IMG/VR virus record: IMGVR_UViG_3300024054_000362
Span: 1-64,000 of that record
Length of the DNA stretch: 64,000 nucleotides
Strand: one strand, 5' to 3'
The position numbers and the translations under genes are program-made. Shown one piece after another: positions 33,633 to 59,521 of the stretch. Within the stretch, counting starts at the first letter, position 1; the number at the start of each line of letters is the position of its first letter. The notes under the pieces were generated by a model. That model saw only the letters and a list, made by a program, of their open reading frames with translations, was not told where the DNA came from and searched no databases.

Positions 33633-33708
33633 GCGTGGTCTTCGGGACTTGCACCCGATTCTCTTTGGCTGCTTCTTCGCGTTCGCCGTCCGCGAAGCCA
33701 AGACCACG
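33633..33708 (-). ncRNA. Aberrant tRNA-like RNA (acceptor stem and T arm, no anticodon arm)
   Basis: CGTGGTC/GACCACG stem and TCGGG-TGCAAGT-CCCGA T arm, with an irregular hairpin between them. Confidence 0.5.
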
Positions 33709-33957: not shown

Positions 33958-34313
33958 GCGAGGATGCGTGCCGTCGAGCGTTTGAGCTTCATGCGTAACT
34001 CCAAGTTCATCCGTAGAGGTGGTTGCAGATATCGGCCTGCACGCCGGGTGAAGGTGGAAGGAGTCGAACCTTCGTGTGCCCCTGAGGAGAACCCATCATT
34101 TCAGTTCCTCGTTTCGTTCGAGACGGATCGACACCGTGTGACCGTTCTTGGTTCGAAGCGTCACGTCGACGGTGTCGAGGTCGACGCTGAGACGCTTCGC
34201 GAGATCCGGAACAACGCCGAGCATTCCCAACACCGTCGCGTTCACCATGTCCGGTGAAGCTGTCGGCGGGGTCGTGTAGACGATCTTGAACCCGGAAGGG
34301 CCGAGCGCCGTCG

Positions 34314-40104: not shown

Positions 40105-40827
40105 TCTTCTCGAAGCGGACACGGGTATCGACCGGTTCCAACGCCGTCGCACGCACCTGCGCTACCGCAGCCGAGCACACTGCAACGGATCAGTTCCTTC
40201 GCTTCGTTGACGTCTTCGTTGTCGTTGAGACCGTTCGCCTTGGCGAGCTGAATGAGCGCACACAGCGAACGCTGAAGGGTCAACAGGTCCGTGCTCTCAG
40301 CTTTGGTCGTGTTCTCGTCGTTGTACACGGTGAGGCCGTTGTTCTCAGCGATGACGATGAGAGTACGCACGAAGCGTCTCACCGTTTGTAGGTACTCACC
40401 GTCGTCCATGAGAACGACGCCACGATCGTACGTACAGATTCGTCCGAAGGTCATCAGCGGCCCGTCATTCGATGTAGTTTGCGCGTCGCGCGGTCCTGCA
40501 TGGCTTGGAGCCCGTCAGGTTGATGACCTCGCGGACAGCAAGCATCGCAGGCTTGACGAAACATCAGGTCGTCGAGGTCCCACGCAGGCTGCCGCGCTTC
40601 GCAACCATCCACGTGACCCGTCCCGTCGCAGTCTTCACAGTCTGGATCGGTCAGGTCGACGACCTCTAGCTTGTTTTTCTCGTCGGGATCGGCCATAGAG
40701 TCGACAGTCTAGCAAGTTGCTCTTGACTTGTCGCGAACAGAACGATAGAACGACGGTTGCCTGGGATCTGTCGGTGGTGTTGCTGCCAGACCCTTTCATC
40801 GAAGGCGCGAGGCCTTCGTGTCATGTC

Positions 40828-41472
40828 ATGGCGACAAACAAGAACGATAACCTCAGACCAGCCGAACGCTTCGCTCGCGCGGAACGCGCCAAGTCGGCAC
40901 GTACACAATCTCTTCGCGTCGTTTGTCCGGCCTGTCACGTTGCGCCCTGGAAGCCGTGTCGCACCGTCGTCGGTCTCAAATTTCACAATGAGCGATCGAC
41001 AGTTCATTCTGCGCGAGTTTTTGCGCTTGGACATCGTCGCTATAAATCCAACCGCGGAAGCGAGCGTCTGCAGTGCTCCCGTTGCCGCCGTGTACGATCG
41101 GCGTCGTTATTTCGTTGGCAGAATCGGTCGAAAGGACGTCGGCATCCTCAGTGTCGTGATTGCGCCAAACACTCCAATGCGCGTGACCGGCAACGAAACC
41201 GCGCAAGCTATCGCGACGCCAAGAAGACCTCGCAACGCGAGTTGAGGGAGATCGTCAAGAAGGCCAAGGACGTCCCGTGTATCGATTGTGGCAAGACGTA
41301 TCCGCCGTACGTCATGGATTTCGATCATCGACGTGGCGTCAAGGTCGCCAAGGTTTCTGCACTCGTGTACGCCAATTCTGTTCGGCTACTTCTCGAAGAG
41401 ATCGAGAAGTGCGACGTCGTCTGCGCCAACTGTCACCGCGAGCGAACGTTTGGAAAGAAGGTTAAGCCGTGA
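40828..41472 (+). CDS. Phage HNH endonuclease-like protein
   Basis: PCIDCG..MDFDH..EEIEKCDVVCANCHRERT. Confidence 0.8.
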   Translation: MATNKNDNLRPAERFARAERAKSARTQSLRVVCPACHVAPWKPCRTVVGLKFHNERSTVHSARVFALGHRRYKSNRGSERLQCSRCRRVRSASLFRWQNRSKGRRHPQCRDCAKHSNARDRQRNRASYRDAKKTSQRELREIVKKAKDVPCIDCGKTYPPYVMDFDHRRGVKVAKVSALVYANSVRLLLEEIEKCDVVCANCHRERTFGKKVKP

Positions 41473-43343
41473 ACAAGGAAAATCTCGGACCTGCAGAAAA
41501 GATCATTCAGTCGATCCTAACTTACAGCGATCACATGATGCACAACCGCCCCGGCGCCGTGACGCCCGACGGTCGGACGAATGTCGGCGTCCGCTGGGAA
41601 CCGGTCACGCACAAGGTCGAAGACGTCAACGGCACGCCGACCAAGGTCGTCTACAAGCTGACCAAGGTCGGCAAGAAGCAGTCGAAGATCAAGCTCGGCA
41701 CGCTTCGCGCCGACGGCAAGATCATGAACGGCGCGCCGACGCCAATCGCGGAGTACCGCGACGCAGGTCTTTTCCCCGAGGTCGCGGCGTGGTTCTACCG
41801 TCAGGTCGCCGACGTATGGAAGCTCGACAACGAGTTTGCCGCGCGCTGGGCGAGCTTCGCCTTCGGCCAGGAGCACCGCGACCTCAAGGTCGTGCTGGCT
41901 GCGTTCATGCTCGTGCAGTCCCGCAAGGGAGAGCCCGTGCGCGATGCCGGCAAGGTCGTCTTCTACGACGAGGACTTCCGCGACGTCGGCGAGGCCATGA
42001 TGTTGATCCGTCGCAAGGACGACAAGGATCTCAACCCGAAGCTCCTACTACGTATCCGCGACGTACTCGCGCTGCCGGCAGTCGCGGCGATCAATCGCGA
42101 GCTGGGGTTCGGCATCTCGACGCGCAAGCCGTGCCTTGGGCGCTGGGAGGCCGTCGTCCAGAAGTGGCTACGTCACCGCGAGGAGAACCCAAGGCTCCTC
42201 GACGGCTTGGTCAAGGCAGGCTTCCGCTCTACCGTCATCGAGCTGGCGAAGCGTGTTGGCTACAAGCCCGAGACGCCAAAGTTCTTCGAGGCGCTGCGCT
42301 GGAAGCAGAAGCAGGCCGACGACGGTCGCCGTCAAATGATGATCGGCGTCGACGTCGCGAAGGCGGAGTCGTGGGCCGGCCTTTCCGAGAAGGACATCTG
42401 CGAGAAGATCACCAAGGACAAGCCGGACTGGAAGCGCATCGTCGGCATGCTGCCGTCGAGTGTCGGTGTCACGCGCGCCGTGGTCGCTGCCGCGATCGAG
42501 GCGAAGGCGCTCTCCGACCGCGACCTCATCATCGCGTCGTCGACGCTCGAAGAGCTGGGCCTCCTCGACGTCGCGTCGATCCGCGCACGCTGGGAGAAGG
42601 CGGTCAAGAACGCCGAGGACACGCGCGCCGCCAACATCGCGCGCAACGTCAAGAGCAAGGACATCAAAGAGAAGCTCGTCGAGGGCGCGGACGCGGCGGT
42701 CAAGAAGGCCGTCGAAGAGGTGGTGAAGCACCTCCGTATCTACGCCTTCATCGACAAGTCGGGATCGATGCAGCAGTCGATCGAAATGGCAAAGAGCCAC
42801 ATCGCGAAGCTCCTACAAGGCTTCCCGCTGGATCGCATCCACGTCGCGGTGTTCGATACGTCCGGGCGTGTGATCGAAATCAAGCACGCGTCCACCAAGG
42901 GCGTCGAGAACGCGTTCAAGGGCATCACCGCAGGAGGTGGTACTGAGCACGCATCCGGCATTCGCGCCCTCGAAGGCTTCAAGCCGAAGGACGACGAGGA
43001 CACGCTGTTCATCTTCGTCGGCGACGAAGCCGAGAGCAACCACAAGACGTTCGAGGGCGCCGTTCGCAACTCGGGATTGCGTCCAACCGCGTTCGGCATG
43101 CTCCGCGTCCCCGGCGAGAACGGTGACTCGGTACAGCGTACGGCCGCAAACCTCGGCATCCCGTGCTTCATGATCGACGAGAAGACCTTCGAGGACGCGT
43201 ACGCGATCCCACGGACGGTTCGAAACCTGATCGCAGCGACACCGGTCGGTCAGGTCAAGGTCGTCACGGCGGCGCAGCAGCGCATGACGCTCGTCGATCA
43301 GATTCTGAAGACGGAGCTGCTCAAGAAGCCGACGTGGGCTTGA
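41469..43343 (+). CDS. vWA-domain protein with helical TROVE/Ro60-like N-terminus
   Basis: MIDAS motif IDKSGSM, GGGT and FVGDE. Helical N-terminal region. Confidence 0.7.
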   Translation: MNKENLGPAEKIIQSILTYSDHMMHNRPGAVTPDGRTNVGVRWEPVTHKVEDVNGTPTKVVYKLTKVGKKQSKIKLGTLRADGKIMNGAPTPIAEYRDAGLFPEVAAWFYRQVADVWKLDNEFAARWASFAFGQEHRDLKVVLAAFMLVQSRKGEPVRDAGKVVFYDEDFRDVGEAMMLIRRKDDKDLNPKLLLRIRDVLALPAVAAINRELGFGISTRKPCLGRWEAVVQKWLRHREENPRLLDGLVKAGFRSTVIELAKRVGYKPETPKFFEALRWKQKQADDGRRQMMIGVDVAKAESWAGLSEKDICEKITKDKPDWKRIVGMLPSSVGVTRAVVAAAIEAKALSDRDLIIASSTLEELGLLDVASIRARWEKAVKNAEDTRAANIARNVKSKDIKEKLVEGADAAVKKAVEEVVKHLRIYAFIDKSGSMQQSIEMAKSHIAKLLQGFPLDRIHVAVFDTSGRVIEIKHASTKGVENAFKGITAGGGTEHASGIRALEGFKPKDDEDTLFIFVGDEAESNHKTFEGAVRNSGLRPTAFGMLRVPGENGDSVQRTAANLGIPCFMIDEKTFEDAYAIPRTVRNLIAATPVGQVKVVTAAQQRMTLVDQILKTELLKKPTWA

Positions 43344-43637
43344 TGAAGGTCGCTGCACAACATCACGCACGGATCGGGAAGCGCTTGCAGTTGCTTCTCG
43401 ATTACCTGAGCACGAACCAAATCGCCACACTGGAGGAGCTTCTCCAAGTTGTGTACGAGGAGGGACGCTCTCAAGGCTATCGCGAAGGCAACCCCGGCCA
43501 CGACGACGACTGAACGATTTCGCCTCGGATCGGAAGGAGCAGTGCCGCGAGGGCGGAAGGACAGCTTGCCCAGCAACCGGACGAGATAAAGAGGCGACCG
43601 ACAACTGAAACGGAGGTGATTGGGCAACGTTATTTTT

Positions 43638-43686
43638 GGATTCGAAGCTGGCGCGTCTTCAACGAGTTCGATTCTCGTCGAATCCA
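43638..43686 (+). ncRNA. Anticodon-less mini tRNA-like RNA
   Basis: GGATTCG/CGAATCC-A acceptor and ACGAG-TTCGATT-CTCGT T arm, with only a 17-nt D-like hairpin between them. Confidence 0.6.
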
Positions 43687-43699
43687 CGAAAGGTAAAGG

Positions 43700-44284
43700 G
43701 TGATGTTGAAGTTCTCGGAGCTGGATCTGCGACAGTTCGGCGACACGGTGCAACTCGTGGGTGGTGTTTGGGCTGACGACGGCAACGCCTACGTTCTCTA
43801 CTTCCCGGAGTACGTACGCGACGCTTTCGAATTCGTCGATGTCGCGATGGACCACGACGCCTGGAAGGCACTCCTTCGGCAGACCGACCTCGTCGAGACG
43901 GAGGTCTTGGCGAAGGCGAAGAACGGCGAGTTGTTCACGGCGATCTTGCGCAAGTGCGAACGCCAGATCTCACAGCAGGTCTCGTGGAACGTCTTTCGTC
44001 GCGACGGCTACCGCTGTCGTTACTGCGGCAACGACAAGGTTCCGCTCACCGTCGACCACGCCATCCTCTGGCAGAAGGGCGGCCCGTCGATCGAGGACAA
44101 CCTCGTCACGAGCTGCAAGAAGTGCAACAAGATCCGAGGCCAGACGCCGTATGTCGAGTGGCTACAGCACAAGTACTACCTCGATGTCTATCGCAACCTG
44201 ACACCAGAGGTGCGGTATCAGAACGAGATGCTCGTCGACAAGCTGACGAAGATCCCGACGATGCTTCACGTTCGGGAGCGGTGA
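43700..44284 (+). CDS. HNH endonuclease domain protein
   Basis: VFRRDGYRCRYCG..LTVDH..GG..NLVTSCKKCN. Confidence 0.85.
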   Translation: MMLKFSELDLRQFGDTVQLVGGVWADDGNAYVLYFPEYVRDAFEFVDVAMDHDAWKALLRQTDLVETEVLAKAKNGELFTAILRKCERQISQQVSWNVFRRDGYRCRYCGNDKVPLTVDHAILWQKGGPSIEDNLVTSCKKCNKIRGQTPYVEWLQHKYYLDVYRNLTPEVRYQNEMLVDKLTKIPTMLHVRER

Positions 44285-44287
44285 GCG

Positions 44288-44815
44288 ATGGGTCTCTACG
44301 CCAATGATCGCCGCGAGCTGACGCTCGTCATCGACACCGACGAGTACTCGGGCAACTTCGAGCGGCAGATGTTCGCATTCATCTTCGGACGGGACGACAC
44401 ATCCGACGGCGGAACGCGAGATCTCTCGTACTATCGCGACGTCGCGATCGAAGCGGGCGTCGTGGACATGGACGGCCTCCTCGAAGAACGCATCAACGAT
44501 CCCGGCGACGACGGATATCACTTCGCGTACGTGACCATCTGCACGACGCCAGGGTTCTTCAACGTCGACGGAGTCCACTACGAAGAGAATTCGTTCAACT
44601 GCGAACGCTTCCCTCCTGACGGACGTCACCCGGCGTTCCAAAGCGTCGGCGTCTTCTTACAACGCGAACCGACCGACGACGAGCTGAGGCTCATCAAGGC
44701 GCGCGCAAAGCTGTTCACCGACTTCCCAAGGAGGCACGCTTGGGACGCGCGTCCGAAGATCCTCGGATTTCGTCTTCTCATGTGCCAGACGCTCTGGTCT
44801 TCGAGGTCGCTGTGA
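44288..44815 (+). CDS. Hypothetical phage protein
   Basis: LVIDTDEYSGNFERQM. Confidence 0.6.
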   Translation: MGLYANDRRELTLVIDTDEYSGNFERQMFAFIFGRDDTSDGGTRDLSYYRDVAIEAGVVDMDGLLEERINDPGDDGYHFAYVTICTTPGFFNVDGVHYEENSFNCERFPPDGRHPAFQSVGVFLQREPTDDELRLIKARAKLFTDFPRRHAWDARPKILGFRLLMCQTLWSSRSL

Positions 44816-45238
44816 CTGCAGACAAGAAGAATCTCTGCGGCGGTCAGGTGCGGAACAGCGAGTACCCGTGCGACTTACCGCGCTTCCATGATGGCGGCTG
44901 CTTCAGCAACTTCGCAGCGGATCTGTACCGACGCGACCACGCGCCACCGCCACCGCCACGGAAGACGCTTGCAGAAGCATTCGCGAAGCCCCTCGACTTC
45001 GACGGCGCACAGTTCGAACTGGCGAAATGCCTCGGCCTCATGCCCAACGTGCCGTGGGATCCAGTTGGACACAAAGCACTGTTCTGGGCGAGCAACCTGT
45101 TCGGGAATCGACTGTACGACATCCTCGAAGCGCTCGTGAGAATGGGCGCCCTTCATCAGAACGACGAACGACAGTTCAAGTGGAACGACGCGTTCGATTA
45201 CCAAACGACGGCAGAAATCGAAGACGACGAGTAACTTC

Positions 45239-46192
45239 ATGAGCTGGCGCGATCTACTTCAAGCCGAGAACGAGACCATCATCCTGCCGTGGATCGGTGG
45301 TCGTGAGCTGCGTTCGCTCTCACGCACGTGGACGATCGCCGGTGATCTGCCTCGCGAGCACGGTTGGTATCGTTTCAAGATTCTCAAAGGCCGCACAGCG
45401 ACGGTCCAAGTCGGCATCGGCCCCGACGGCCTCACACACGCGACGTGTGCGCACTTCTCGAACGGCTACCTCATCGGCGATCGGTTCGCCGCTGACGACT
45501 TCTCGCCACGCTTCGGTCCTGACGGTCTTCCCATCTTCAGCTGGTTGCCGCGCGTCCACCTGATCGACAACGGTATCGACCGGTTCGCACGTATCAGCGT
45601 TGGCATGATCTATCCCGGCGGCCCGATGATCTTTGGGGTGCAACAGATGCCCCTCGGTCCCGAAGATGCTGTCCTTCGCGCCTACGAGGACCGCAAGACG
45701 ACCGTCGACGACATCAAGGGCGTCACACCAGCTCTCAACACAGCCTTCTACATGGAAACACGCCAGCGAGCCGAAGCCGAACGACGCCGAGCCGAGCTGG
45801 AGAAACGTCGCGCCGAAGAAGAAGCCAAACGCGCCGCCGAAGAACGCCGACGACAACTAGTCGAGAAGCTCGGCGACGGCGCAAGCCGACGGCAACTCGC
45901 CAAAGTCGACTTCGGCGAAGCCGCCCGCGCAGCTCTGGCGGTGGGCGGCGCGGAGTTGCTCGACTGGAAGGTCTCACGACAGGCTCGCGAGTTTACCGTC
46001 CGCTTTCGATTCGACGGTCAACGCTTCGAGTGTGTTTGCGACGAGAACCTGCACGTGCTTGATGCGGGAATTTGCTTGATCGATCATCGTACGGGCATCA
46101 AGGGTGATACGTGGTTCACTTTGGAGTCGCTGCCGGCCGTCGTTCGCGAAGCGATCGATACCGGCAAGCTCGTACGATTCAGACACGTATGA
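45239..46192 (+). CDS. Hypothetical protein, candidate E2-like component of the Ubl system
   Basis: Central coiled coil and a C-terminal domain with a single-Cys motif VLDAGICL..D..FTLESLPAVVREA. Context suggests the role. Confidence 0.5.
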   Translation: MSWRDLLQAENETIILPWIGGRELRSLSRTWTIAGDLPREHGWYRFKILKGRTATVQVGIGPDGLTHATCAHFSNGYLIGDRFAADDFSPRFGPDGLPIFSWLPRVHLIDNGIDRFARISVGMIYPGGPMIFGVQQMPLGPEDAVLRAYEDRKTTVDDIKGVTPALNTAFYMETRQRAEAERRRAELEKRRAEEEAKRAAEERRRQLVEKLGDGASRRQLAKVDFGEAARAALAVGGAELLDWKVSRQAREFTVRFRFDGQRFECVCDENLHVLDAGICLIDHRTGIKGDTWFTLESLPAVVREAIDTGKLVRFRHV

Positions 46193-47396
46193 GAACCAAG
46201 ATGAACGGCCTCGCGACCGACTTCGTTGGCGACTTCATTGAGCTGCAAGCGCCCGTGCACACATCCGAGAGGGAGCCCTCTTGGAGAACACACGCTCGCG
46301 GTCTTGTTCGTGCGGTCACGTCCGGCATCGATGGATCGTTCCTGTGGTTCTGGTTGCAAAATGGCGACGAGGTCGTTCAAGTATCGACGATGAGCAACTA
46401 CGGCGAACCGTGTCGCATCATCATCGTCACGAAAGGGAGTCAGACATGATGCCCAACTACGATCCGCACGCCGAGCGTCGCCTCTACTTCAAGCAGCTCG
46501 CAGACGCGTTTCGAAACGTCGTCGCTCGACACGCACAAAAACGTCTCGTGCCGGGATTGATCCCCGAACCTGCAAGCTCGGATAGCATCATCCCCGGCGA
46601 GGTCGTGGTCCTCAACCACGTCCTGTGGCTCTGTGATGAAGTCGATCGACTGATCCGTCTCGACCTATACGGCGAAGCCGTCGAACACATCGGCACGATC
46701 CGCGGCGTGTTGTGGACGACGGGTGTCATGTCGCTTTCAGAATCGAAAGCCCTGACGAAGGCCTGTGCGACGTGTGGCAAGCCCGGACATCGTCCACAAG
46801 ATCACGCCGGATGGAACCCCGACGAGGAAGGACACGGCTGATGAGCGTTCGCATCGGAGAAGTGAAACCGCGTCTCGACCACACCCCAACTGCTGCCATG
46901 CACGTCCAAGCCAGCCGTGCCGGCGTCGAGTTGCACTGTGATCCAAAAATCACACTCGAACCGACGGAGGCGCGCAACGCCGCCGCGTTGCTTGTCCGTG
47001 CCGCCGAAGAGGTCGAGATGATGCGCAAGCGTTTTTCGGGACAACCGTGAACGACGACCCACAACAGCTTGCACAACAGGCCGCCGAGTTTCTGCAACGC
47101 GGGCGCGAGAAGCTCCTTGCGAAGCTTGCGAGTGGCGAGACGATCAGCCTTTTCGACGCTCTTGAGTCAATCGGCGCTTTCGTCGACGAGATCTGGAACG
47201 GCGAATGGGAAGGCCCGATCTTGTTTCACGACGTTCGCGGCAAGCAGGTACTGATCCTCGTCCAAACTACCGACCACGACGCGTTCGCCGCCTGGCGCGA
47301 AGCGCACAAAAACTTCTCCGGGGAAGAACTGCAAGACTTCGCTCGGCAGGCGCTCATCGCCATGGTCTCGCGTCCAATCGACCCGAAGGACTTCGC

Positions 47397-48065
47397 GTGA
47401 ACGACGACTCCAACCAGTGGACTGACGAGCGCGTCGCCGAGCAGTTCAAGCTCGAAGTCCGTCAGCGTTTCGAAGAAGAGAACGCTCGATGGCGCGCTCG
47501 CGAGACCGCAGATCTCGATCGTCTGGCCAAGGCACCCGACTGGGAAGATCGCATGCGCAACCCGAACTTCGCTGCAGGCATGGCCGTCCGCGACAGCTTC
47601 TTCTGGGACATCTACAGTTCATCGACGATCAACTACGAATACAACTCCGTCCAGGTTGTCTTGCCCAACGGCTTCGCGATCTACGCCGACTTCGTTGACA
47701 TGTTCGGTCGCACTTCTGTCGGATGGGGAACCCCGAGCGTCGGCGGCAAGATCATCGACGGTGAATCGTACACCGTCATCGATGTTCTGCTCGTCGACTA
47801 CTGGGACGACAAGCGTGCCGCCGCGTGGCCCGAACGACAAAGGACGTTCCTGATGGGACTCACACAAATCCAGAAGCTCAAGTTGAGCATGGAGATCTTC
47901 GATCGGTACCTGGAGCCTGGTGTCAACGACGGCGGCGTACTGCCGTGCGCCAACGAGTTGCACGTCGTTGGTGTTCACTGCGCGGCGCTTGGTGGCGATG
48001 ACCGTGCGAAGCTCGAAGCGATGGGTTGGGAGTGGGACGACCGCGTCTGGAAGCTGCCCCTATGA
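47397..48065 (+). CDS. Hypothetical protein
   Basis: GTG overlap with the upstream stop. Protein-like composition. Confidence 0.55.
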   Translation: MNDDSNQWTDERVAEQFKLEVRQRFEEENARWRARETADLDRLAKAPDWEDRMRNPNFAAGMAVRDSFFWDIYSSSTINYEYNSVQVVLPNGFAIYADFVDMFGRTSVGWGTPSVGGKIIDGESYTVIDVLLVDYWDDKRAAAWPERQRTFLMGLTQIQKLKLSMEIFDRYLEPGVNDGGVLPCANELHVVGVHCAALGGDDRAKLEAMGWEWDDRVWKLPL

Positions 48066-48500
48066 ACCTGACGCCCGTCGAACTGGAGGGCCTACGCGTG
48101 ATCACCAAGGCACATCTCGGAGAGCTGCACCACGCCCGCGGCTACCAAGGCGTCGCCGATGGCGAGCTTCGTCGACAAATCGATCTTTACGAAGGCGTCC
48201 TGACCAAGATCAAGAACGCGCTCGCTGGGAAATGACACCAACCATGAAGACGCAAGCTGAGATTGATGCAGGAAACCAGTACGGTGCCTACCAACAAGGT
48301 TGGCGCGCGGGTGCGGCGTTCCGCGCGATGGATCTCAAAGCTGCCGAGCATGAGAGCTTCCTGATCCGCGACGCCTACAACCAGGGCTACACCGACGGTC
48401 GTCACGCTTACAACCAGGCGATGCACAACGCTGCGCGCAAGTACAACTACAAGATCAGCGTGCTGCGCTTGATGGACGACGCCAAATCCGAGGAGAAACC

Positions 48501-48926
48501 GTGACGCGCTACTTCATCGACACCGAGTTTTTCGACAAGGGCCCCAACGACCTCCACCTGATCTCGATCGCGCTTGTCTGCGACGACGGCCGCGAGCTGT
48601 ACCTCTGCGACAGTGAGTGGCTCTGTGCCGACGGCACACCTGACGCCGTCATGGCAGACGACTGGCTTCGTGCGAACGTCTTCCCGCACTTGCCGCACTG
48701 CAAGTGCCCTCCGCCACCCGAGCCCATCCAGGGACGTCCGTCGTGTCACCGCGGCTCCGCACCGTCATCATCTCCGCGCCATGCAGCCAGTCGCCATCGT
48801 GGATGGTCGATGCTATCGTCCGAGGACGCCTCCGCGAGTTTCGCGAGTAAGAACGCGTGTTTACTTTGCACCGAAGGCGGTCTTGCGTCAGAGGTCAGAC
48901 CCGTGCGCAAGTATCTGCCCCGATGA
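48501..48926 (+). pseudogene. Truncated DEDD 3'-5' exoribonuclease (Rv2179c-like)
   Basis: RYFIDTEF..LISIALV.DDGRELY..DWLRANVFPHL. Similarity is lost after ~48720. Confidence 0.6.
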
Positions 48927-49540
48927 TCACCGCCAAGCAGGCTACAGGAATGACGAGCCAGGACATGAACGTCGCCGTCGCAGGGAGCAAGCCGCTTGAT
49001 GATCTCTTCTCGATCATCAACGCGAAGGCATACCGCGAAGGTGACTTCACCCTGGCTTCCGGCCGCCGTAGCAGCCACTACTTCGACGGCAAAAAGGTTC
49101 TGTTCGACCAGCAAGGCTCCCGTCTGTTCGCGAGTTGGCTTCTGGAACAGTTGTGGAAGCTCGACGCCCTTCCCACCGCGATCGGGGGCCTTGAGATCGG
49201 CGCGATACCTATCGCGTGCACGACCATGGATCGCGCGACCTTCCCGCTGAAGGCATTTGTCGTGCGCAAGCAGGCGAAGCAGCACGGCACCGGGAATCTG
49301 GTCGAGGGTGACCTGAGCCCAGCCGATCGAGTGGTGGTTGTCGATGACGTGATCACGACCGGCGAATCGACTATGAAGGCGATCCGCGCGGTGAAGGAGA
49401 TCGGCGCTCAAATCATCGGCATCTACTGTCTCGTCGATCGTCAAGAAGGTCACTCGGAAGAGTTCGACTCGTACGCGGCGCTTTTCCACCCCGCGTTCAC
49501 GCTTGAAGAGTTCACCCGACGTCGTCGGGAACGCTCGTGA
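48923..49540 (+). CDS. pyrE: Orotate phosphoribosyltransferase
   Basis: FTLASGRRSSHYFD, GGLEIGAIP, VRKQAKQHG and VVVVDDVITTGES. Confidence 0.9.
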   Translation: MITAKQATGMTSQDMNVAVAGSKPLDDLFSIINAKAYREGDFTLASGRRSSHYFDGKKVLFDQQGSRLFASWLLEQLWKLDALPTAIGGLEIGAIPIACTTMDRATFPLKAFVVRKQAKQHGTGNLVEGDLSPADRVVVVDDVITTGESTMKAIRAVKEIGAQIIGIYCLVDRQEGHSEEFDSYAALFHPAFTLEEFTRRRRERS

Positions 49541-49893
49541 GTCCACGCGACCTCGCCGACACACTTCGCCGTGGCCTCGCACCCGACAACCTCGACACGG
49601 CGATCGATGCGTTCGACGTTTGGTCGGAGATCGATCCCGCAGTTGGCAGCACGATCGCAAACATCCTTCGGCAAGTTCGGGGACGTTGGGATGAACCAGT
49701 TCCGCAGGACGAATTTCGGCGCGTGACCGACGTAGTCACGCGGGCACTTGAGATCCTTCGCAAGACCGAAGAGGAGCAGGGTTATGTTCCAACGGCTGAC
49801 CTCGTCGACTTGATTCGATCGTACAGTGCTCCGTAACGTGAGCGTTCACGCTCGCGAGATCATCGACGACGACCTGATGAAAGGACTCGGCCT

Positions 49894-50304
49894 ATGATGG
49901 AAACCGGCGTCGTTATCAACACCAACGGCGAGCCTGTCTACTGGCACGAGCCCAACGGCCGTTCGTCAGGATCGCTACCCGACAGCCGCGACCTGTGGAA
50001 CGTCCTTTGGCGCGCTCACCAAGACGGCTGGCTTGCAGGCGTCGCGCACTCGCATCCAGGTTCAGGTGTTCCGCACCCATCGCACGAAGACACGACCACC
50101 TTCATCGCGATCGAGAAGGCACTCGGGCGCGCCCTCTCGTGGTGGATCACCAGCGCTGACCGACTCATCCTGATCAACCGCTCGAAGGACAGCACCTTCG
50201 GCCACATCGTGTACGCCATTCGAGAGATCGATGTCGAACGCGAGCCTGCATGGGTCGTCGAACTGCGGCGGCGGTCAGGCATCGTCGTTCCCGACCGTTT
50301 GTAG
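49894..50304 (+). CDS. JAB/MPN (JAMM) metallo-isopeptidase
   Basis: N-terminal E plus HSHPGSGVPHPSHED (HxHx7Sx2D). Confidence 0.85.
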   Translation: MMETGVVINTNGEPVYWHEPNGRSSGSLPDSRDLWNVLWRAHQDGWLAGVAHSHPGSGVPHPSHEDTTTFIAIEKALGRALSWWITSADRLILINRSKDSTFGHIVYAIREIDVEREPAWVVELRRRSGIVVPDRL

Positions 50305-50698
50305 AAAGGGTGCCGTGATCAAGTCAAGCCAGCTAAGGAGCGGATGCTATGCGAGTCGAGTCGAAGCAGCCGTTCTAAAAAACAGATTCTTGATCGTTGA
50401 TTTCGCCATCATTGCGGGTCCGGGTGCGCACGGGAGAAAATTTCGTGAACGTTTCAGAATTCCCCCCGACAACACGCCCGAGCCAACTTCAGACGACACC
50501 CCGGAAACGTTGTCGAAGGATCAGATCGCGAGGGTTTGGTTAGTAATGTTAGCCTTCGCTACCGGACTCGTAAGCGATGGAGATGTTGACGGCGGTTTTC
50601 GACCTTCCGATCTGGTCGGAAAATTTGTCTCAGCAGAGATCGTAAAAAATCGCGGGTTACTCAGACTTCACCCTCCTGATGATCCTGCCTTGTGAAGT

Positions 50699-50720
50699 AG
50701 CTCTTGACTTGTCAAGAGCT
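50699..50720. promoter_or_regulatory. Perfect inverted repeat overlapping a TTGACT -35 box upstream of the Ubl gene
   Basis: AGCTCTTGAC-TT-GTCAAGAGCT. Confidence 0.6.
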
Positions 50721-50791
50721 ACCAGCTAACCTCATCGAGAACTGTCAACTGGGGAGCAACGAACGCTCCTCTCCGTAGGATGAGGTGACGC

Positions 50792-51073
50792 ATGGCGAAC
50801 GAGCTGGTACAAGTGATCCGACCCGACGAGGCGCGCGTGAACATCACGTACGCTGGACAGAACGGCGATCTGCCGCAACCTGTGTTTTTCGAATCGGCCG
50901 ACGGTGACGTCAAGGCCTGGGTGACCGAAGCCGTCCGTAACGGCGGCGTCCCCGGCATCCGTCGTGACGAAGCGGCGAGGTTCGACGACTTCGTGGTCGA
51001 TCGATTCCCGCCGAACGAGCAGTACACGTACAACCGGATCCAGGTCCGTCCCAAGACGGCGTTCGGTCGGTAG
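50792..51073 (+). CDS. Putative ubiquitin-like (beta-grasp) protein
   Basis: 93 aa with a strand-strand-helix-strand pattern, ending RIQVRPKTAFG-R. RBS GAGG. Flanked by the JAB and ThiF genes. Confidence 0.55.
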   Translation: MANELVQVIRPDEARVNITYAGQNGDLPQPVFFESADGDVKAWVTEAVRNGGVPGIRRDEAARFDDFVVDRFPPNEQYTYNRIQVRPKTAFGR

Positions 51074-52264
51074 CAATCCGTGTCCGACGATGCCCCCGAT
51101 AACGCCCATGGTTGGCAGGTACGCAGCGTTGCTGAGATGGCCGATGAGTTGGACGCCGAGCACCGTGCCGAGGTGCGCGCCCTCATCGAAGGTAAAGGTA
51201 GGTGGCAACTCCTTCCAGATGATTGCGCACTGGTCTTCCAGGGGAACTCCCAGAGCAAACACGATCGGCGACACGCCGGATACTGGATCCAGCTCGACGA
51301 GGTTTTGACTTCGTCTCAAATGTTGGACTGGATTTTCCAAATCGGGCGCAAGAGTTGGGGACGTGGTGCAGCCGTGGCTGAACTGATCGAGGCATTTCAA
51401 CTGACACTCAACCCACAAGGCACACTCTGTTCGTGTGGCGCATCCAAACAACTCACAGCCGAACAGGTACGCGCGCTCATCAAAAAACTTGCCAAACTCG
51501 GGGAGCCGCTAGTATGACTCCAAGCGAACAACTTTTGGGCGACGGTCGTGCTCTCCAGGACGTCCTGAACGCCGTCTACCACGGCGCCGTTCAGGAGTGC
51601 GAAGGCCGCGAACACGCCGGCCACACGATCGGAAACGGTCATCACATGGCCCAGACGATCGTGAAGAACGTCGAAGACGAGCTGCTTCGACGCGGTCTCT
51701 TCGTGAAGGAACACGATACGTCACCTCACGAAGAGCGTGCACAGAAGTTCCTCGCCGAGGTCCACAAGATCTTCGTCGAGACCATCAAGATGTCGACCGA
51801 AGCCGACGCTGCAGTCTTCAAGCGCGTCGTCTACGGGCTCACGAGCACGCTGCGCGATCTGTTTCGCGATGGTGCCTATGCCGCCCGAGAAGAGTTGAAG
51901 GCTACGCTGCGTGAGCGCTTCGGCGCACTGCTCAACGGGCTGTGAACCGTGATCTACCACGGCGTCGTCGTCCACTGTGACTGCCGAACGCTCTGGGGGA
52001 CGCTGTTGTTCGCGCCCGACGATGACGGCCGCGCAATCATCGACGCCATCTCGGCGGCCACAATCGCCCAAGCTTCTCGCGTCGCCAAAAGGCTACGCCG
52101 CGACAACCGTGGCGTCATCGCCGAGCTTCCGTTTCATTCCACCGCAGTCGAAGGCGGTGGAGGGACCTTTGTCTCAACGCCGGGGGACCTCGTCCAGGTG
52201 ATTCTCAACGCAGACTATCGTCTCGTTGGGGTACGCTACTCATCAAGGAGCTAGGAGAATCAAC

Positions 52265-53011
52265 ATGCAGAAATGGATTTGGGGATCGATTCTGTGTGCC
52301 TGTCTCGTCGCGTGCTACGGGTCGACGCGCAACCCGGAAGCGTGCTGCGAGACCATCGAGGAGTGCATGCGGCTCGGAACACCCGACGCGATCCTCTGTG
52401 AGGTCGGCGCGTGCGTGAACTTCAAGTGCGTCGAGAACACGAACGCCTGTGACAGCGCCGACGATTGCGAGACCTTGTTGTGCGTGAACGGTACGTGCAT
52501 GCCGCCAGAGCCGCCACCTGTCGATGCGCCTCCTGAAATTGCCGCATTCGACATCGCGTACCCGAACGTATGGCGGCGATCTGATTTTCTGATCGACCCA
52601 TTCTCGTTGTGCATGATGATCGTCAACACGACTGACGTGCCGCTCAACTTGTCGTCGCTCGCGATCAAGAGCATCGCCGACGATCATCCCGTCGCCAACG
52701 TCCGGCTAGTCATCAAACCGGACCTGAACATCACCATCCAACCACACAAGGCAGGCGGTTTCGCGAACGGCCTCTGCGGCGAAAAGCTCGTCGACTCGGG
52801 GTTGGTGTCGGAAACACGCGTCGATACGATGACGAGCTACGTCGACTACGAAATTCAAGACGCGCCCGCCGGCACGTACGACATCACGACGAACGCTGTC
52901 TTCACCCTCGACAACGTCGACGTCCCCGTCCAGTTCGTCACCCACATCGTGGCGGGACCGGTCGTCTATGCCGATCCTGAACAAGCCACGCGCGTGAAGT
53001 TGACCCGCTGA
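52265..53011 (+). CDS. Cys-rich lipoprotein
   Basis: Lipobox-like LVAC and Cys-rich repeats. Confidence 0.65.
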   Translation: MQKWIWGSILCACLVACYGSTRNPEACCETIEECMRLGTPDAILCEVGACVNFKCVENTNACDSADDCETLLCVNGTCMPPEPPPVDAPPEIAAFDIAYPNVWRRSDFLIDPFSLCMMIVNTTDVPLNLSSLAIKSIADDHPVANVRLVIKPDLNITIQPHKAGGFANGLCGEKLVDSGLVSETRVDTMTSYVDYEIQDAPAGTYDITTNAVFTLDNVDVPVQFVTHIVAGPVVYADPEQATRVKLTR

Positions 53012-53399
53012 GGTCGTTCGTGCGAGACGCTGTCGTATGGGCAGTGTCTTTCACATCGTGATCTGGACTGAGGGCGTTACAGACATCGTTTTCGAATTGG
53101 GCACCGAGGGCGAGCTTGCCACGCGCGAGGTCGCCGAAAAGGTCGCAGGAGCCTACCGCGAGCTTCTGGATATGGTCTACGCACGGAACGGCGGGGCCGA
53201 ACATGCCTTCCGATCGCGTGTTGGGATTCTCGAAATCCCGATGCCAGATCCCCGCGTGCGACGGCCCGTGCCGCGCACCGATGTCGAGGAAATCATGAAA
53301 GAAGCCCGCGAACTCCTCCTACGCAGAAAGCTGCGTAGTACGACTACGTAGCAACTTAGTCTTGACTAGTTTATGTATCGACGTCACTCTCACGACGTC

Positions 53400-54008
53400 A
53401 TGTATCGACAGACCGTGATTGTTGTCGGAGTCGGAGCCCTTGGTTCTCACGTGGTTCAGCTTATACGCAACGAAGCAAACCTCTTCGTGATCGACTTCGA
53501 TCGCGTCGAATCCAAGAACGTCCTCAGCCAGTTCCACGGCAAGCCCAACGTCGGCAAGGGCAAGGTCGCGTCGATCGGCCAGACCATGAACTTCCTGTGG
53601 GGCGTCAAAGTCGACGGCGCCAACGCCAAGCTCGTCGACATCAACGTCGACGTCCTGCTCAACCGCGACTTCCGCTGGCCGGAAGGTATCGTCCGCAAGG
53701 CGGACCTCGTCATCGACTGCCTCGACAACGGAGATGCTCGTCGACTCGTCCAGGCGTTCGCACGCGCACAGAAGATGCCGTGCCTTCACGGCGCGCTCGC
53801 CGCCGACGGCGGCTTCGGCCGCGTGATCTGGGACGAGAACTTCGTCATCGACGACAACACGGCCGGCGCAGCAACGTGCGAGGACGGCGCACATTTGCCG
53901 TTCATTGCGGTCGTCTCCGCCCTCATTGCTCGTTCCGCTCAGGAATTCCTCCTGCGCGGGAAACGATACGGTTGGTCGATCGCGCCTACTCGTATCGAAA
54001 TGGTGTAA
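53400..54008 (+). CDS. ThiF/E1-like adenylyltransferase
   Basis: VVGVGALGS, IDFDRVESKN..Q, GKGKV, DLVIDCLDN and ATCEDG (Cys). Confidence 0.9.
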   Translation: MYRQTVIVVGVGALGSHVVQLIRNEANLFVIDFDRVESKNVLSQFHGKPNVGKGKVASIGQTMNFLWGVKVDGANAKLVDINVDVLLNRDFRWPEGIVRKADLVIDCLDNGDARRLVQAFARAQKMPCLHGALAADGGFGRVIWDENFVIDDNTAGAATCEDGAHLPFIAVVSALIARSAQEFLLRGKRYGWSIAPTRIEMV

Positions 54009-54048
54009 TCGTCTCAACCAGTCGCAGTACCAACCAAAGGATCGAAAC

Positions 54049-54435
54049 GTGAATCAGGGATCGCTTCAGAAACTCGTCAACAACTTCGTCGATCAGCTCC
54101 ACGATCTCTGGAAGCAGGAAATCGTCGACGCCCTTGGCGGGAAGGTCGGCTCGCTCAAGAACGGCAACGGTGTCGGTTACGGTCGCGGCGTGAAACGTGC
54201 CCCCGCAGATCTCGACCGACTCGCCGATCGGTTCGTCGACTTCGTGAAGACGAACCCGCATCTCCGCATCGAGCAGATCAACAAGCAGCTCGGCACGACG
54301 ACGAAGGAACTGATGTTGCCGATCAGAAAGCTCATCGCCGAAGGCCGTCTCAAAGCCGACGGCCAGAAGCGCTCGACGACGTACGCCGTGCCCGGCGAGA
54401 AGAAACCCGCCGACAAGAAGCCCAAGAAGCGCTAA
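54049..54435 (+). CDS. Winged-helix nucleoid-type DNA-binding protein (myxobacterial type)
   Basis: KR...L..L....V..NP.LRIEQINKQLG..TKEL.LPIRKL....GQKRSTTY. Confidence 0.7.
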   Translation: MNQGSLQKLVNNFVDQLHDLWKQEIVDALGGKVGSLKNGNGVGYGRGVKRAPADLDRLADRFVDFVKTNPHLRIEQINKQLGTTTKELMLPIRKLIAEGRLKADGQKRSTTYAVPGEKKPADKKPKKR

Positions 54436-55615
54436 CGCATGCGTCCGATGAACTTGAGCGGTTATCACGTTGTGGAACGTCTTGCCCTAGAAGGCCGTCG
54501 GCACGCCGAGGCTAAGTTAAGAGACCTGGTGCGCGCTGCTCACGCCGAACGAACGACAGAAAGCGGCTCGCTCGGAGACCAAATTCTAGCCGCGGTCGAA
54601 GCTCTTCCCGACGAAAGCAAGCTCCAAAATCTTCCCGACGACATCCGCAACAAGTTGGAAGACGCGATCGTCCAATTCGAAATCCAATATCACGCCGATC
54701 AAGTCATCAAGACCCTCGAAGAGAAGAAGCCCTAGGGCTTGCATGCGCACGAATCGATCGAACCGCACGCATCGGATCCCGTCGGATGACACGGTTGCGT
54801 TCGTCGAATCTGCTCACAGTGCTGCTCACACGAACAACCGCCGCACTGCGAGGAGTTGCTCGCAGCGCTGGAGCCGGCCGAGAGCACGAGCACTTGGACC
54901 GTCTCCACGCCAAGCCTGAGCTTCCGCAGCTCCATCATCGGGAACTGCCGTGGATTTTCTCCGCTGCACGAACGCCTGTCGCAGCGGCATCACCGACCCC
55001 GACGTTGCCGTGGAACGCCTCTTCGGCGATATCGAGCGCCGTCTCGCGCGCCTGCGGCGTCAACGGACGGTTCTTCGTCTGTGAATCGACCCACGTTGCC
55101 AACCAGTCGCGGTTCTTGCCCATGGTGACCTCCTTCGCTTGCGATGCCAAAGCTCCACGGATCGACGCATGAGAAAACCACGAACCGTGTCGAGGGGTAT
55201 AACCAAGTCGTGCTTTCTGTAGATCCAACACACCGCCGGTGTTTCCGTGCACATCCGACGAACCCGCTCGGCCACGAGGGTTGTCGACTCCCGCCCAACC
55301 ATGAAGGTCAGCATCGTTGGAAGCGACTCATGAACCTGTGCAAGCATCGCGGCGGTTGGCGACCGTGTGACGACTTCACCGACTGCCCGGTCGATCACGA
55401 TCCAGGCGATGAAGATCAGGACGCTCGGTGAAGAAGTTCTCGACGGAGATCGGCGTTGTGAACATGCTCTCGCATTGTCGTGCTTGACAACCTCACCGCG
55501 AGCCGCTAGGGTGCTTCTCGACTGGTTACCAACCGCATCGTGCTTACAAGCGCCGCAAGGCATCGTCACTCCAGAACGACAGCACCAGCACGACGCACTC
55601 GGTAACTAGGTCTAC

Positions 55616-55743
55616 GGCAGGTAAGGGAGCTGGGCTCCCGCTTTCCTCATAAGAAAGAACACACCAACAGTTTCATCTCGTCACGCGCGCGTGACACCCG
55701 CGACTGTTTACAAGCTAGGTTGGTTCGATTCCAACACCTGCCT
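55616..55743 (+). tRNA. tRNA(CAT) with ~60-nt insertion in the variable region
   Basis: GGCAGGT/ACCTGCC acceptor, GGGAGC/GCTCCC D arm, CTTTC-CTCATAA-GAAAG anticodon arm and GTTGG-TTCGATT-CCAAC T arm. Confidence 0.65.
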
Positions 55744-55902
55744 CCGTCTGACAACTGAAGAGCGCGCCTTGTTGACGTCACAGCAACGTCAACGTTGATA
55801 GAAACAATACGGATCAAGCAAGAAACCCAACAGCGGCCCTCGGCACCAAATACGATTTGGAGGGCAAACTATCATCATCTTCGAACCTTTAATCGAAGAC
55901 CT

Positions 55903-55952
55903 GTGGATCGGGGATAGTCGGATCCCATTTCGGTTCGAATCCGAGATCCACA
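55903..55952 (+). ncRNA. Anticodon-less mini tRNA-like RNA
   Basis: GTGGATC/GATCCAC-A acceptor, GGGAT-AGTCGG-ATCCC D hairpin and TCGG-TTCGAAT-CCGA T arm. Confidence 0.6.
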
Positions 55953-55977
55953 CCGAAGTCGTCATCCTGAGATGCTC

Positions 55978-56053
55978 ACACGCATAGCTCATCGTAGAGC
56001 GTCGCCCTGACAAGGCGAAGGTTGGGGCCTCAAAACCCCTGCATTCAACACCA
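55978..56053 (+). pseudogene. Degenerate tRNA-Val(GAC)
   Basis: TAGCTCA..AGAGC D arm and TCGCC-CTGACAA-GGCGA are intact. Acceptor stem and T loop are disrupted. Confidence 0.55.
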
Positions 56054-56295
56054 GCATCCCTCCTCGACGGCTTCTTTTTGTCCCAAAGTCCAAGCGACAT
56101 CGCTTCGGCGATCTAGCCCACGCGGAGGGACACCTTTTTGCGGTCGCCAGCGCCGACACGACTCCGGTTCTCCAACTGGAATCTTCCCGTGAGAAGCTGG
56201 ATGGAGCGGTATCAGCACCATCACCGGTACAAGCCGCGCAGATCGAGACTACCACCCGGTTTCGACCCGCGACTCACGTACGAAGCTGATGTTTT

Positions 56296-59284: not shown

Positions 59285-59357
59285 GCTGGTGTAGCCCAAC
59301 GGTAGCGGCAGCGTGTTTAAGCCACGCGCGGTGCCGGTTCGAGTCCGGCCACCAGCA
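59285..59357 (+). tRNA. tRNA-Leu(TAA), short variable arm
   Basis: GCGTG-TTTAAGC-CACGC arm, A73. Confidence 0.85.
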
Positions 59358-59360
59358 CGC

Positions 59361-59435
59361 GTCACGGTAGCCCAACCTGGTAGCGGCACAACCTTGAGGT
59401 GGTTGACAGTCCGGGTTCGAATCCCGGCCGTGACA
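59361..59435 (+). tRNA. tRNA-Leu(GAG), short variable arm
   Basis: CAACC-TTGAGGT-GGTTG arm. Confidence 0.85.
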
Positions 59436-59440
59436 CGAGA

Positions 59441-59516: not shown

Positions 59517-59521
59517 CGAAC

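What the first reader, a model, noticed from the sequence alone, without database searches (positions are those of the whole stretch)
43638..55952. Two independent ~50-nt anticodon-less mini-tRNAs
Seen: 43638-43686 and 55903-55952 each have a perfect 7-bp acceptor stem with discriminator A, a canonical TTCGA(T/A)T T arm and one D-like hairpin, but no anticodon arm. Their sequences differ, so the architecture recurs without duplication. A third acceptor plus T-arm unit lies at 33633-33708 (-). Inference: elbow/acceptor mimics that act as decoys for tRNA-targeting defence nucleases, RNase P/Z processing signals in polycistronic RNA, or ligands of the Ro60-like protein.
Basis: partly seen in the sequence, partly recalled or inferred. 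Interest (0 to 1): 0.7.

Follow-up and report, generated by a model that had tools for sequence, protein, structure and literature searches.

The report
Anticodon-less mini-tRNAs in a jumbo phage
Two roughly 50-base tRNA look-alikes that keep the acceptor stem and "elbow" but have no anticodon arm are real, and they belong to a large, undescribed set of tRNA-derived non-coding RNAs around a possibly Ro60-like gene in a lineage of environmental jumbo phages.

Summary
43638-43686 and 55902/3-55952/3 each have a perfect Watson-Crick 7-bp acceptor stem, a canonical T arm, a short hairpin with GG in its loop, and no anticodon arm. None appeared in 150 simulated genomes; two were observed.

The genome is a 221-kb lake-water phage. 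Mini 1 is conserved just downstream of the 41469 gene in two relatives, with compensatory changes in the acceptor and T stems. A conserved 79-nt structured domain lies upstream of it. Mini 2 sits where relatives carry the 3' end of a roughly 130-nt tRNA-like RNA and keeps that RNA's acceptor stem through two double substitutions. No orthologous mini was found for it.

Other anticodon-less minis occur inside tRNA arrays of related phages. One pair is conserved while its flanks are unalignable. The lineage also carries YrlA-order (T arm, closed acceptor, D arm) RNAs and at least 57 long tRNA-like elements.

Best reading (inferred, not shown): these are tRNA-shaped modules cut out by RNase P and tRNA 3'-end enzymes. 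They punctuate ncRNA/mRNA transcripts and release a tRNA mimic. A link to Ro60 is plausible but unproven: the N-terminal fold match is weak and Pfam's TROVE model is not hit. There is no expression data and no evidence for a decoy role.

The parts
43638..43686 (+). Mini 1: anticodon-less tRNA-like unit. Acceptor 43638-43644 with 43679-43685, hairpin with UGGC loop 43645-43656, T arm 43662-43678, discriminator A at 43686.
   Evidence: Homologs L020 5244-5296 (53 nt) and L018 4438-4537 (100 nt, with an extra arm) show compensatory changes in 3 acceptor pairs and 1 T-stem pair.
43520..43598 (+). Conserved structured leader domain upstream of mini 1. It has a closing stem, an inner hairpin and purine-rich conserved loops.
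   Evidence: The closing stem has a different sequence in each of the three phages but pairs in all of them. No Rfam match.
43599..43637 (+). Spacer between the leader domain and mini 1. It contains GACAACTGAA and GGAGGTGA.
   Evidence: Conserved in L020 and L018. The 10-mer occurs only twice in the genome, each time upstream of a mini.
41469..43343 (+). 624-aa protein with a helical-repeat N-terminal part and a C-terminal vWA domain (possibly Ro60-like).
43700..44284 (+). HNH endonuclease gene that starts 16 nt after mini 1.
   Evidence: Pfam HNH, E = 6e-11; PHROGs. The stretch 43344-45238 is missing in most relatives, where the 45239 homolog follows the vWA gene directly.
55902..55953 (+). 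Mini 2: anticodon-less tRNA-like unit. Hairpin 55911-55926, T loop 55934-55940.
   Evidence: Positionally orthologous to the 3' end of the long element with an ACG loop in L011 and L050. The acceptor stem is kept through two double (compensatory) substitutions (and direct reading).
55806..55847 (+). Relic of the long element: the 3' half of its anticodon-like arm and the 5' strand of its extra arm.
   Evidence: About 35 of 39 bases identical to L050 in the alignment.
55616..55743 (+). 128-nt long tRNA-like element: acceptor, tight hairpin, 5-bp arm with loop CUCAUAA, extra arm with CUCG and ACAAGC motifs, and T arm.
   Evidence: It is 1 of the 57 distinct copies across window and relatives (the other 56 are in relatives). 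20 of 22 consensus pairs show compensatory changes.
55969..56061 (+). Conserved tRNA-like RNA closed by an 8-bp outer stem. Its core, 55978-56047, scores 40.7 bits as tRNA; the loop at the anticodon position varies among orthologs.
33633..33708 (-). Third unit: 9-bp acceptor, 4-bp T stem, and a conserved 7-bp hairpin whose loop and 3' strand read GGCGAACG.
34050..34073 (-). Orphan T arm plus acceptor 3' strand: a decayed copy of the permuted (YrlA-order) element that is intact in L021.

Best explanation
The two minis are real tRNA-derived genes that kept only the upper half of a tRNA: the acceptor/T-arm stack and a short hairpin with GG in its loop that can dock on the T loop. They cannot decode.

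They lie inside longer transcripts of the phage's tRNA and ncRNA arrays. The inferred mechanism is that host RNase P cuts at their 5' end and the tRNA 3'-end machinery cuts after the discriminator, followed by CCA addition. This sets the 3' end of the RNA upstream and the 5' end of the RNA downstream. For mini 1 those are the structured leader domain and the HNH mRNA. For mini 2 it is the tRNA-like RNA with the outer stem. A stable tRNA mimic of about 50 nt is released in the process.

Mini 1 with its leader may also be a two-module Y-RNA-like partner of the adjacent, possibly Ro60-like, protein.

Shown: the anatomy, the rarity by chance, synteny, covariation, and the family context. Inferred: transcription, cleavage, CCA addition, and any role acting on other molecules.
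For: - Rarity: 0 hits in 150 simulated genomes against 2 observed.
- Mini 1 family: three phages carry it at the same locus on the same strand, with 8 consensus pairs changed on both sides. The vWA proteins of these phages are 71-82% identical.
- What is conserved is what RNase P and the 3'-end enzymes need: the acceptor, the T arm and the hairpin loop. The middle is free to vary (49, 53 and 100 nt).
- No consensus promoter or terminator lies at either mini. The 3' trailers begin with AC, as at the phage's true tRNAs.
- In relatives, anticodon-less minis sit at tRNA spacing inside tRNA arrays or next to permuted Y-like RNAs. Under strict criteria there are 19 units outside ARAGORN tRNAs on the + strand and 0 on the - strand in 965 kb; several of these are sub-hits or duplicates.
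- The minis of L062 and L068 agree at about 37 of 47 positions, while their flanks cannot be aligned.
- Mini 2's acceptor differs from its L050 ortholog at two pairs, both changed on both strands.
- YrlA is known to be cut by RNase P and to receive CCA in M. smegmatis (PMC4201824).
Against: - There is no RNA evidence at all. The one run labelled RNA is probably DNA and barely holds the phage.
- Mini 2 has no orthologous mini. It lies next to a relic of its parent element, and the genome holds other decayed pieces. An internal deletion would keep both acceptor strands without any selection.
- Minis are sporadic: only a minority of relatives carry one.
- The phage encodes no CCA-adding enzyme or RtcB.
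- Punctuation alone does not explain why the hairpin loop is conserved, although RNase P does contact the elbow.
Confidence: 0.45

Rival explanations
1. The released minis act on other molecules as tRNA mimics. They bind or titrate a factor that recognises the tRNA elbow or acceptor. Alternatively, for mini 1 with its leader, they act as a Y-RNA-like partner that ties the 41469 protein to such a factor.
For: - Mini 1 and its leader lie 177-295 nt downstream of the 41469 gene on the same strand. Known YrlA RNAs lie within 4 kb of Ro60 on the same strand (PMC4201824).
- A phage Ro60 binds phage-encoded Y-like RNAs (PMC12135203).
- Relatives carry RNAs in the YrlA order: T arm, closed acceptor hairpin, D arm.
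- The third unit carries an exact GNCGAANG motif that is conserved in 4 phages.
- The whole-protein fold search puts Ro60 structures on top, and 58 of the 100 nearest Atlas clusters are TROVE families.
Against: - The minis themselves have no Ro-binding motif.
- Rfam YrlA gives no hit in the window and only 14.8 bits against a threshold of 69 in a relative.
- The N-terminal domain matches Ro60 only weakly, and Pfam's TROVE model is absent.
- Mini 2 lies 12.5 kb from the gene.
- The RNA-protein complex job was not folded.
Confidence: 0.25
2. The minis are neutral remnants. Recombination and internal deletion in repeat-rich tRNA arrays removed the middle of a tRNA-like gene. The stems are intact only because the event is recent.
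For: - Mini 2 sits beside the relic of its parent element.
- There is an orphan T arm at 34050-34073.
- One mini in L062 clearly derives from a tRNA-Met-like gene.
- Minis are sporadic among relatives.
Against: - Mini 1 is kept, with compensatory changes, across phages whose vWA proteins are only 71-82% identical.
- The L062 and L068 minis are conserved while their flanks are saturated.
- Parsimony makes the short form ancestral in the mini 1 clade. This rests only on pairwise identities: window and L018 are closest (82%), and the short form is found in the window and in the more distant L020.
Confidence: 0.18
3. The minis are decoys for host defence or toxin enzymes that recognise the tRNA acceptor or elbow.
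For: Only the shape, and the general fact (my own knowledge) that phages carry tRNAs to counter defences that target tRNAs.
Against: - Most known defence nucleases of this kind cut the anticodon loop, which the minis lack.
- No gene context points to such a system.
- Nothing here tests it.
Confidence: 0.08
4. Mini 1 is part of a short upstream reading frame that is translationally coupled to the HNH gene.
For: One frame stays open across mini 1 and ends in TGA overlapping the HNH ATG in the window and in L018. In L020 it runs into the next gene.
Against: - There is no conserved start codon.
- Indels of 1 and 3 nt put the acceptor 5' strand in a different frame in L020.
- The changes between strands are complementary, which is the mark of an RNA helix.
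Confidence: 0.04

Closest known systems
YrlA-type bacterial and phage Y RNAs (Rfam RF02553; Chen et al. 2014, PMC4201824; phage phiLo Yrl1/2, PMC12135203)
   Same: They are tRNA-derived mimics with a canonical T arm, a D-like loop and an acceptor-like stem, encoded next to a Ro60-type gene on the same strand. M. smegmatis YrlA is cut by RNase P and receives CCA.
   Different: YrlA is permuted (T arm, closed acceptor hairpin, D arm) and nested inside a Ro-binding stem formed by its two ends. The minis have normal tRNA topology, free ends and no Ro-binding module. They do not match the Rfam model.
mascRNA/MALAT1-type tRNA-like processing modules and mitochondrial tRNA punctuation (my own knowledge)
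   Same: A tRNA-shaped element inside a longer transcript is cut by RNase P and RNase Z. This forms the ends of the neighbouring RNAs and releases a small tRNA-like by-product.
   Different: Those systems are eukaryotic or organellar, and mascRNA keeps a short anticodon-like stem. Here cleavage is inferred, not shown.
tRNA-like domain of tmRNA
   Same: An acceptor stem plus T arm with a reduced D region and no anticodon arm.
   Different: tmRNA carries a tag reading frame and pseudoknots between the two halves. The minis are contiguous 50-mers, ARAGORN finds no tmRNA, and the Rfam tmRNA hit is 12.6 bits against a threshold of 84.
Phage T4 stable RNAs C and D in the tRNA cluster (my own knowledge)
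   Same: Small non-decoding RNAs encoded in a phage tRNA array and processed together with the tRNAs. Their function is still unknown.
   Different: They are longer (about 120-140 nt) and unrelated in sequence. No homology was tested here.
Armless mitochondrial tRNAs
   Same: Extreme reduction of the cloverleaf to about 45-55 nt.
   Different: Those lose the D or T arm but keep the anticodon arm and still decode. One 53-nt unit of relatives L043/L045 is of that kind, but the window's minis are not.

Membership tests
canonical tRNA | 7-bp acceptor stem with discriminator, and a T arm with a loop of the type TTCRANY | tested here: met
canonical tRNA | Anticodon arm (5-bp stem, 7-nt loop) | tested here: not met
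   The linkers of 17 and 20 nt cannot form it. ARAGORN calls neither unit.
canonical tRNA | Reaches the Rfam RF00005 gathering score | tested here: not met
   No tRNA hit for mini 1 at E up to 10. Mini 2 gets only tRNA-Sec at 15.4 bits against a threshold of 47.
YrlA Y RNA (RF02553) | Encoded within about 4 kb of a Ro60 gene on the same strand | tested here: inconclusive
   Mini 1 starts 295 nt after the 41469 gene on the same strand; mini 2 is 12.5 kb away. Whether that gene is Ro60 is itself unsettled.
YrlA Y RNA (RF02553) | GNCGAAN0-1G motif near the 5' end, in a stem formed by the two ends | tested here: not met
   Absent from both minis. The leader has only near matches. The third unit, 33633-33708, has an exact GGCGAACG, but in a hairpin.
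YrlA Y RNA (RF02553) | Order T arm, closed acceptor-like hairpin, D arm; reaches the Rfam gathering score of 69 bits | tested here: not met
   The minis have normal tRNA order and there is no YrlA hit in the window. Relatives' permuted elements have the order but score 14.8 bits.
tmRNA | Tag reading frame and pseudoknots between the acceptor halves | tested here: not met
   The units are contiguous 49-52 nt. ARAGORN finds no tmRNA. The beta_tmRNA hit is 12.6 bits against 84.
Ro60 (TROVE plus vWA) for the 41469 protein | C-terminal vWA/MIDAS domain | tested here: met
Ro60 (TROVE plus vWA) for the 41469 protein | N-terminal TROVE ring of HEAT repeats | tested here: inconclusive
   Pfam's TROVE model is not hit, and the PDB profile search finds only vWA proteins. 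The whole model has Ro60 on top, E = 1e-7, TM about 0.3. The N-terminal part alone has phage Ro60 as best hit, E = 0.02, TM 0.24, followed by generic helical repeats. Residues 29-97 are beta-rich, unlike Ro60.
tRNA-like processing module (RNase P/Z punctuation) | Acceptor/T-arm minihelix at a junction between RNAs, with no promoter or terminator of its own | tested here: met
tRNA-like processing module (RNase P/Z punctuation) | Actual cleavage at both ends, and CCA addition | not testable with these tools
   No RNA run holds the phage.

The most novel reading that the evidence does not exclude
A widespread lineage of environmental jumbo phages has built a modular kit of tRNA-derived non-coding RNAs around a very divergent Ro60-type protein. 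The kit holds three forms: permuted YrlA-like RNAs; RNAs of normal tRNA topology that carry a conserved CUCG/ACAAGC arm; and bare acceptor-plus-elbow minis. In this reading the minis are free-standing effector modules that engage a host tRNA-binding enzyme during infection.
Probability: 0.22. Interest if true: 0.85.

Novelty: new variant of a known kind. Interest (0 to 1): 0.62.

Why it matters
tRNA mimicry by Y RNAs is known, but what the tRNA-like part does is an open question. Here nature has separated that part from the rest, several times independently, in phages found in many metagenomes (297 relatives of the marker protein).

This offers a minimal natural substrate of about 50 nt. It can be used to ask which host enzymes recognise the tRNA elbow and acceptor during infection, and whether tRNA-shaped punctuation shapes phage transcripts.

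The search also exposed a large covarying RNA family (at least 57 copies) with no Rfam match. Standard tRNA finders miss all of these elements, so phage tRNA-array annotation is incomplete.

Tried and rejected
- A covariance model built from mini 1 alone (R1) was too sequence-specific. It missed mini 2 and gave only noise in relatives.
- MAFFT could not place the acceptor strands of unrelated minis in register, so no general model was built. I used my own acceptor-plus-T-arm scan, with shuffles and the opposite strand as controls.
- Exact-pattern scans of IMG/VR for the mini 1 core and for its leader found nothing. GenBank phages hold no relative of either region beyond tRNA-Met.
- Population variation: lake metagenome contigs are identical over mini 2.
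- Expression: the one run labelled RNA is probably DNA.
- The RNA-protein complex prediction was not folded and gives no evidence either way.
- The CcrColossus region fetched as an outside control held only 3 tRNAs and was not used.
- attP-like tRNA fragment: rejected, because both acceptor strands are present and no integrase is nearby.
- Upstream peptide: rejected.
- The protein at 45239, always next to the vWA gene in relatives, gave no functional lead.


Full report
WHAT THE WINDOW IS. The window is the first 64 kb of a single 221,422-bp virus record with 61% G+C. All 13 tRNA genes that ARAGORN calls lie between 28.6 and 59.7 kb. Near-identical DNA occurs in a dozen lake-water metagenome runs. 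GenBank phages hold no close relative.

CHECK OF THE OBSERVATION. Both units are as described.

Mini 1 (43638-43686) has a 7-bp all-Watson-Crick acceptor stem, a 5-bp T stem with loop TTCGATT and discriminator A. Its 17-nt linker cannot form an anticodon arm.

Mini 2 can be read in two registers, 55903-55952 or 55902-55953. Either gives an 11-12-bp acceptor/T stack, loop TTCGAAT and a 5-bp hairpin at 55911-55926.

Neither unit is called by ARAGORN or reaches any Rfam threshold. A scan for exactly these features found 2 in the genome and none in 150 simulated genomes. Every site of the type GTTCRANYC flanked by a 5-bp stem lies in a tRNA or a tRNA-like element. Metagenome contigs from other runs carry mini 2 unchanged.

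The third unit (33633-33708, minus strand) is also real and is 82-87% identical in three relatives.

RELATIVES. The 624-aa protein at 41469-43343 found 7 IMG/VR contigs and 297 metagenome stretches. Eighty of the metagenome stretches were fetched with up to 10 kb of flank, 965 kb in all. Their tRNA genes are almost all on the strand of that gene (667 against 6).

MINI 1 IS CONSERVED.
- In most relatives the vWA gene is followed directly by the homolog of 45239. The window carries an extra 1.9 kb in between.
- Two metagenome contigs share the beginning of that insert. L020 has a 53-nt mini at 5244-5296. L018, the closest relative, has a 100-nt version at 4438-4537 with an extra irregular arm between the hairpin and the T arm.
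- The hairpin core (GCUGG, then C or A, then GCG) and the T loop are kept, while the acceptor sequences differ and still pair. RNAalifold counts 8 pairs changed on both sides, including 3 acceptor pairs and 1 T-stem pair.
- The vWA proteins of these phages are 71-82% identical. The window and L018 are the closest pair, and the short form occurs in the window and in L020. By parsimony on these pairwise identities, the short form is probably ancestral.
- Upstream lies a conserved 79-nt domain (43520-43598). Its closing stem has three different sequences in the three phages. A 39-nt spacer follows it.
- The next start codon comes 16 nt after the mini in the window and in L018 (an HNH gene in both), and 8 nt after it in L020 (a different gene).
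- A frame stays open across the mini, but it has no conserved start and is broken by indels. The complementary changes point to RNA, not peptide.

MINI 2 DERIVES FROM A LONGER ELEMENT.
- The flanks of 55744-55977 align with L011 and L050 on both sides. Those contigs carry a tRNA-like element of about 130 nt at this place.
- In the window, the 3' half of that element's anticodon-like arm and the 5' strand of its extra arm survive at 55806-55847. Mini 2 holds the acceptor, the first hairpin and the T arm.
- Compared with L050, its acceptor differs at two pairs, each changed on both strands (read directly).
- No orthologous mini was found, so selection on the short form itself is not shown.

THE WIDER FAMILY. 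Every relative with enough flank carries long tRNA-like elements (121-148 nt). They have an acceptor stem, a tight hairpin with GG in its loop, a 5-bp arm with a 7-nt loop, an extra arm with an invariant CUCG, an invariant ACA(A/C)GC, and a T arm.
- I found 57 distinct copies, including 55616-55743. In a 33-copy alignment, 20 of 22 consensus pairs show compensatory changes. There is no Rfam match.
- Several relatives also carry a permuted form. It has a sigma-70-like promoter and then runs in this order: the ACAAGC strand, T arm, closed acceptor hairpin, D arm, anticodon-like arm, the CUCG strand, and a run of U.
- That order is the one described for YrlA Y RNAs (PMC4201824). Rfam's YrlA model aligns to the T arm, hairpin and D arm, but at 14.8 bits against a threshold of 69.
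- The tRNA-like RNA at 55978-56047 is conserved, is closed by a covarying 8-bp outer stem, and has a different loop at the anticodon position in each ortholog.

OTHER MINIS.
- Under strict criteria, 19 units of 66 nt or less outside ARAGORN tRNAs lie on the + strand of the relatives and none on the - strand.
- After removing sub-hits and duplicates, anticodon-less units remain in L020, L021, L057, L062 (two), L065 and L014/L068.
- They sit at tRNA spacing inside tRNA arrays, or directly beside permuted Y-like RNAs.
- The minis of L062 and L068 agree at about 37 of 47 positions, while their flanks cannot be aligned.
- One unit (L043/L045) is in fact a D-armless tRNA-Val-like gene. Another derives from a tRNA-Met-like gene.
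- Decay also happens: the window holds an orphan T arm at 34050-34073.

THE PROTEIN.
- Pfam sees only a vWA domain, and the TROVE model is not hit anywhere in the genome.
- An AlphaFold model (pLDDT 79) has Ro60/TROVE structures as its best whole-chain Foldseek hits, E = 1e-7 to 1e-5 over 535-573 columns, TM about 0.3.
- The N-terminal 415 residues alone give phage phiLo Ro60 as best hit, but at E = 0.02, followed by generic helical repeats.
- Atlas feature neighbours are mostly TROVE families.
- "Ro60-like" is therefore plausible, not established. Phage Ro60 proteins with their own Y-like RNAs are known (PMC12135203).

HOW IT MOST LIKELY WORKS. Neither mini has a consensus promoter or terminator nearby, so each must be cut out of a longer RNA. 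The conserved parts are what RNase P and tRNA 3'-end enzymes recognise. The 3' trailers start with AC, as at the phage's true tRNAs.

I therefore favour tRNA-shaped punctuation that also releases a tRNA mimic of about 50 nt (confidence 0.45). The rivals are a role as a tRNA mimic acting on other molecules or as a partner of the 41469 protein (0.25), a neutral remnant, mainly for mini 2 (0.18), a defence decoy (0.08) and an upstream peptide (0.04).

No expression data exist, and the RNA-protein complex job was not folded. The phage has no CCA-adding enzyme or RtcB.

NOVELTY. Searches of the held literature found Y-RNA tRNA mimicry and phage Ro60, but nothing on anticodon-less minis or Y-like RNAs of normal tRNA topology in phages. 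I rate it a new variant of a known kind.

Noticed in passing
window 55616-55743; relatives, for example L016 14763-14890, L011 21695-21827, L046 16200-16324: A large family of tRNA-like RNAs of 121-148 nt with an extra arm carrying invariant CUCG and ACA(A/C)GC motifs. There are 57 distinct copies, 20 of 22 consensus pairs covary, and there is no Rfam match.
   Followed up: partly
L046 about 15990-16200; also L035, L039, L030, L068 and L021 about 15960-16100: Permuted versions of the same RNA in the YrlA order (T arm, closed acceptor hairpin, D arm), with their own TTGACA-17-TAGGGT promoter and a run of U. Rfam YrlA scores only 14.8 bits.
   Followed up: partly
window 55969-56061: A conserved tRNA-like RNA whose acceptor is replaced by a covarying 8-bp outer stem. 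The triplet at the anticodon position differs in each ortholog (GAC, GAU, CGU, UAU, UGA, ACG), so it is unlikely to decode.
   Followed up: partly
window 43520-43598: A conserved 79-nt structured domain upstream of mini 1. It has purine-rich loops (GGAAGGAG, GGAAGG) and a closing stem that has a different sequence in each of three phages. No Rfam match.
   Followed up: partly
window 43600-43609 and 55750-55759: GACAACTGAA occurs only twice in the 221-kb genome (both strands), each time upstream of a mini. CTGACAACTGAA also lies directly 5' of the long element in L011 and L050. Its role is unknown.
   Followed up: partly
window 34050-34073 (-): An orphan T arm plus acceptor 3' strand just after a gene's stop codon. 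It is the decayed counterpart of the permuted element that is intact in L021.
   Followed up: partly
genome 135042-135108 (+), outside the window (L008 1543-1609): A 67-nt unit with acceptor and T arm, a CGG-loop hairpin and a degenerate anticodon-like arm, in a divergent intergenic region far from the tRNA arrays.
   Followed up: partly
L024, L028, L030, L035, L038, L039, just upstream of the vWA gene (for example L030 9760-9827): 68-nt tRNAs with a tight 4-bp D hairpin with loop UGGA and a loop reading UUCCGAA. ARAGORN does not call them.
   Followed up: no
L043 6476-6528 and L045 15622-15674: A 53-nt unit that looks like a D-armless tRNA-Val(UAC), inside a tRNA array. Its 3' 25 nt are identical to a full tRNA-Val in L089.
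   Followed up: partly
window 32294-32992 (-), 40717-41472 (+), 43700-44284 (+): Three HNH endonuclease genes lie beside the tRNA and tRNA-like regions. This hints that homing elements drive the turnover of these arrays.
   Followed up: no
window 59285-59678: Five tRNA-Leu genes in a row (anticodons taa, gag, cag, tag, caa), 2-5 nt apart.
   Followed up: no
window 28734-28822 (-): ARAGORN calls this tRNA-Ser(cga), but it scores above threshold on Rfam's tRNA-Sec model (53.6 bits against 47).
   Followed up: no
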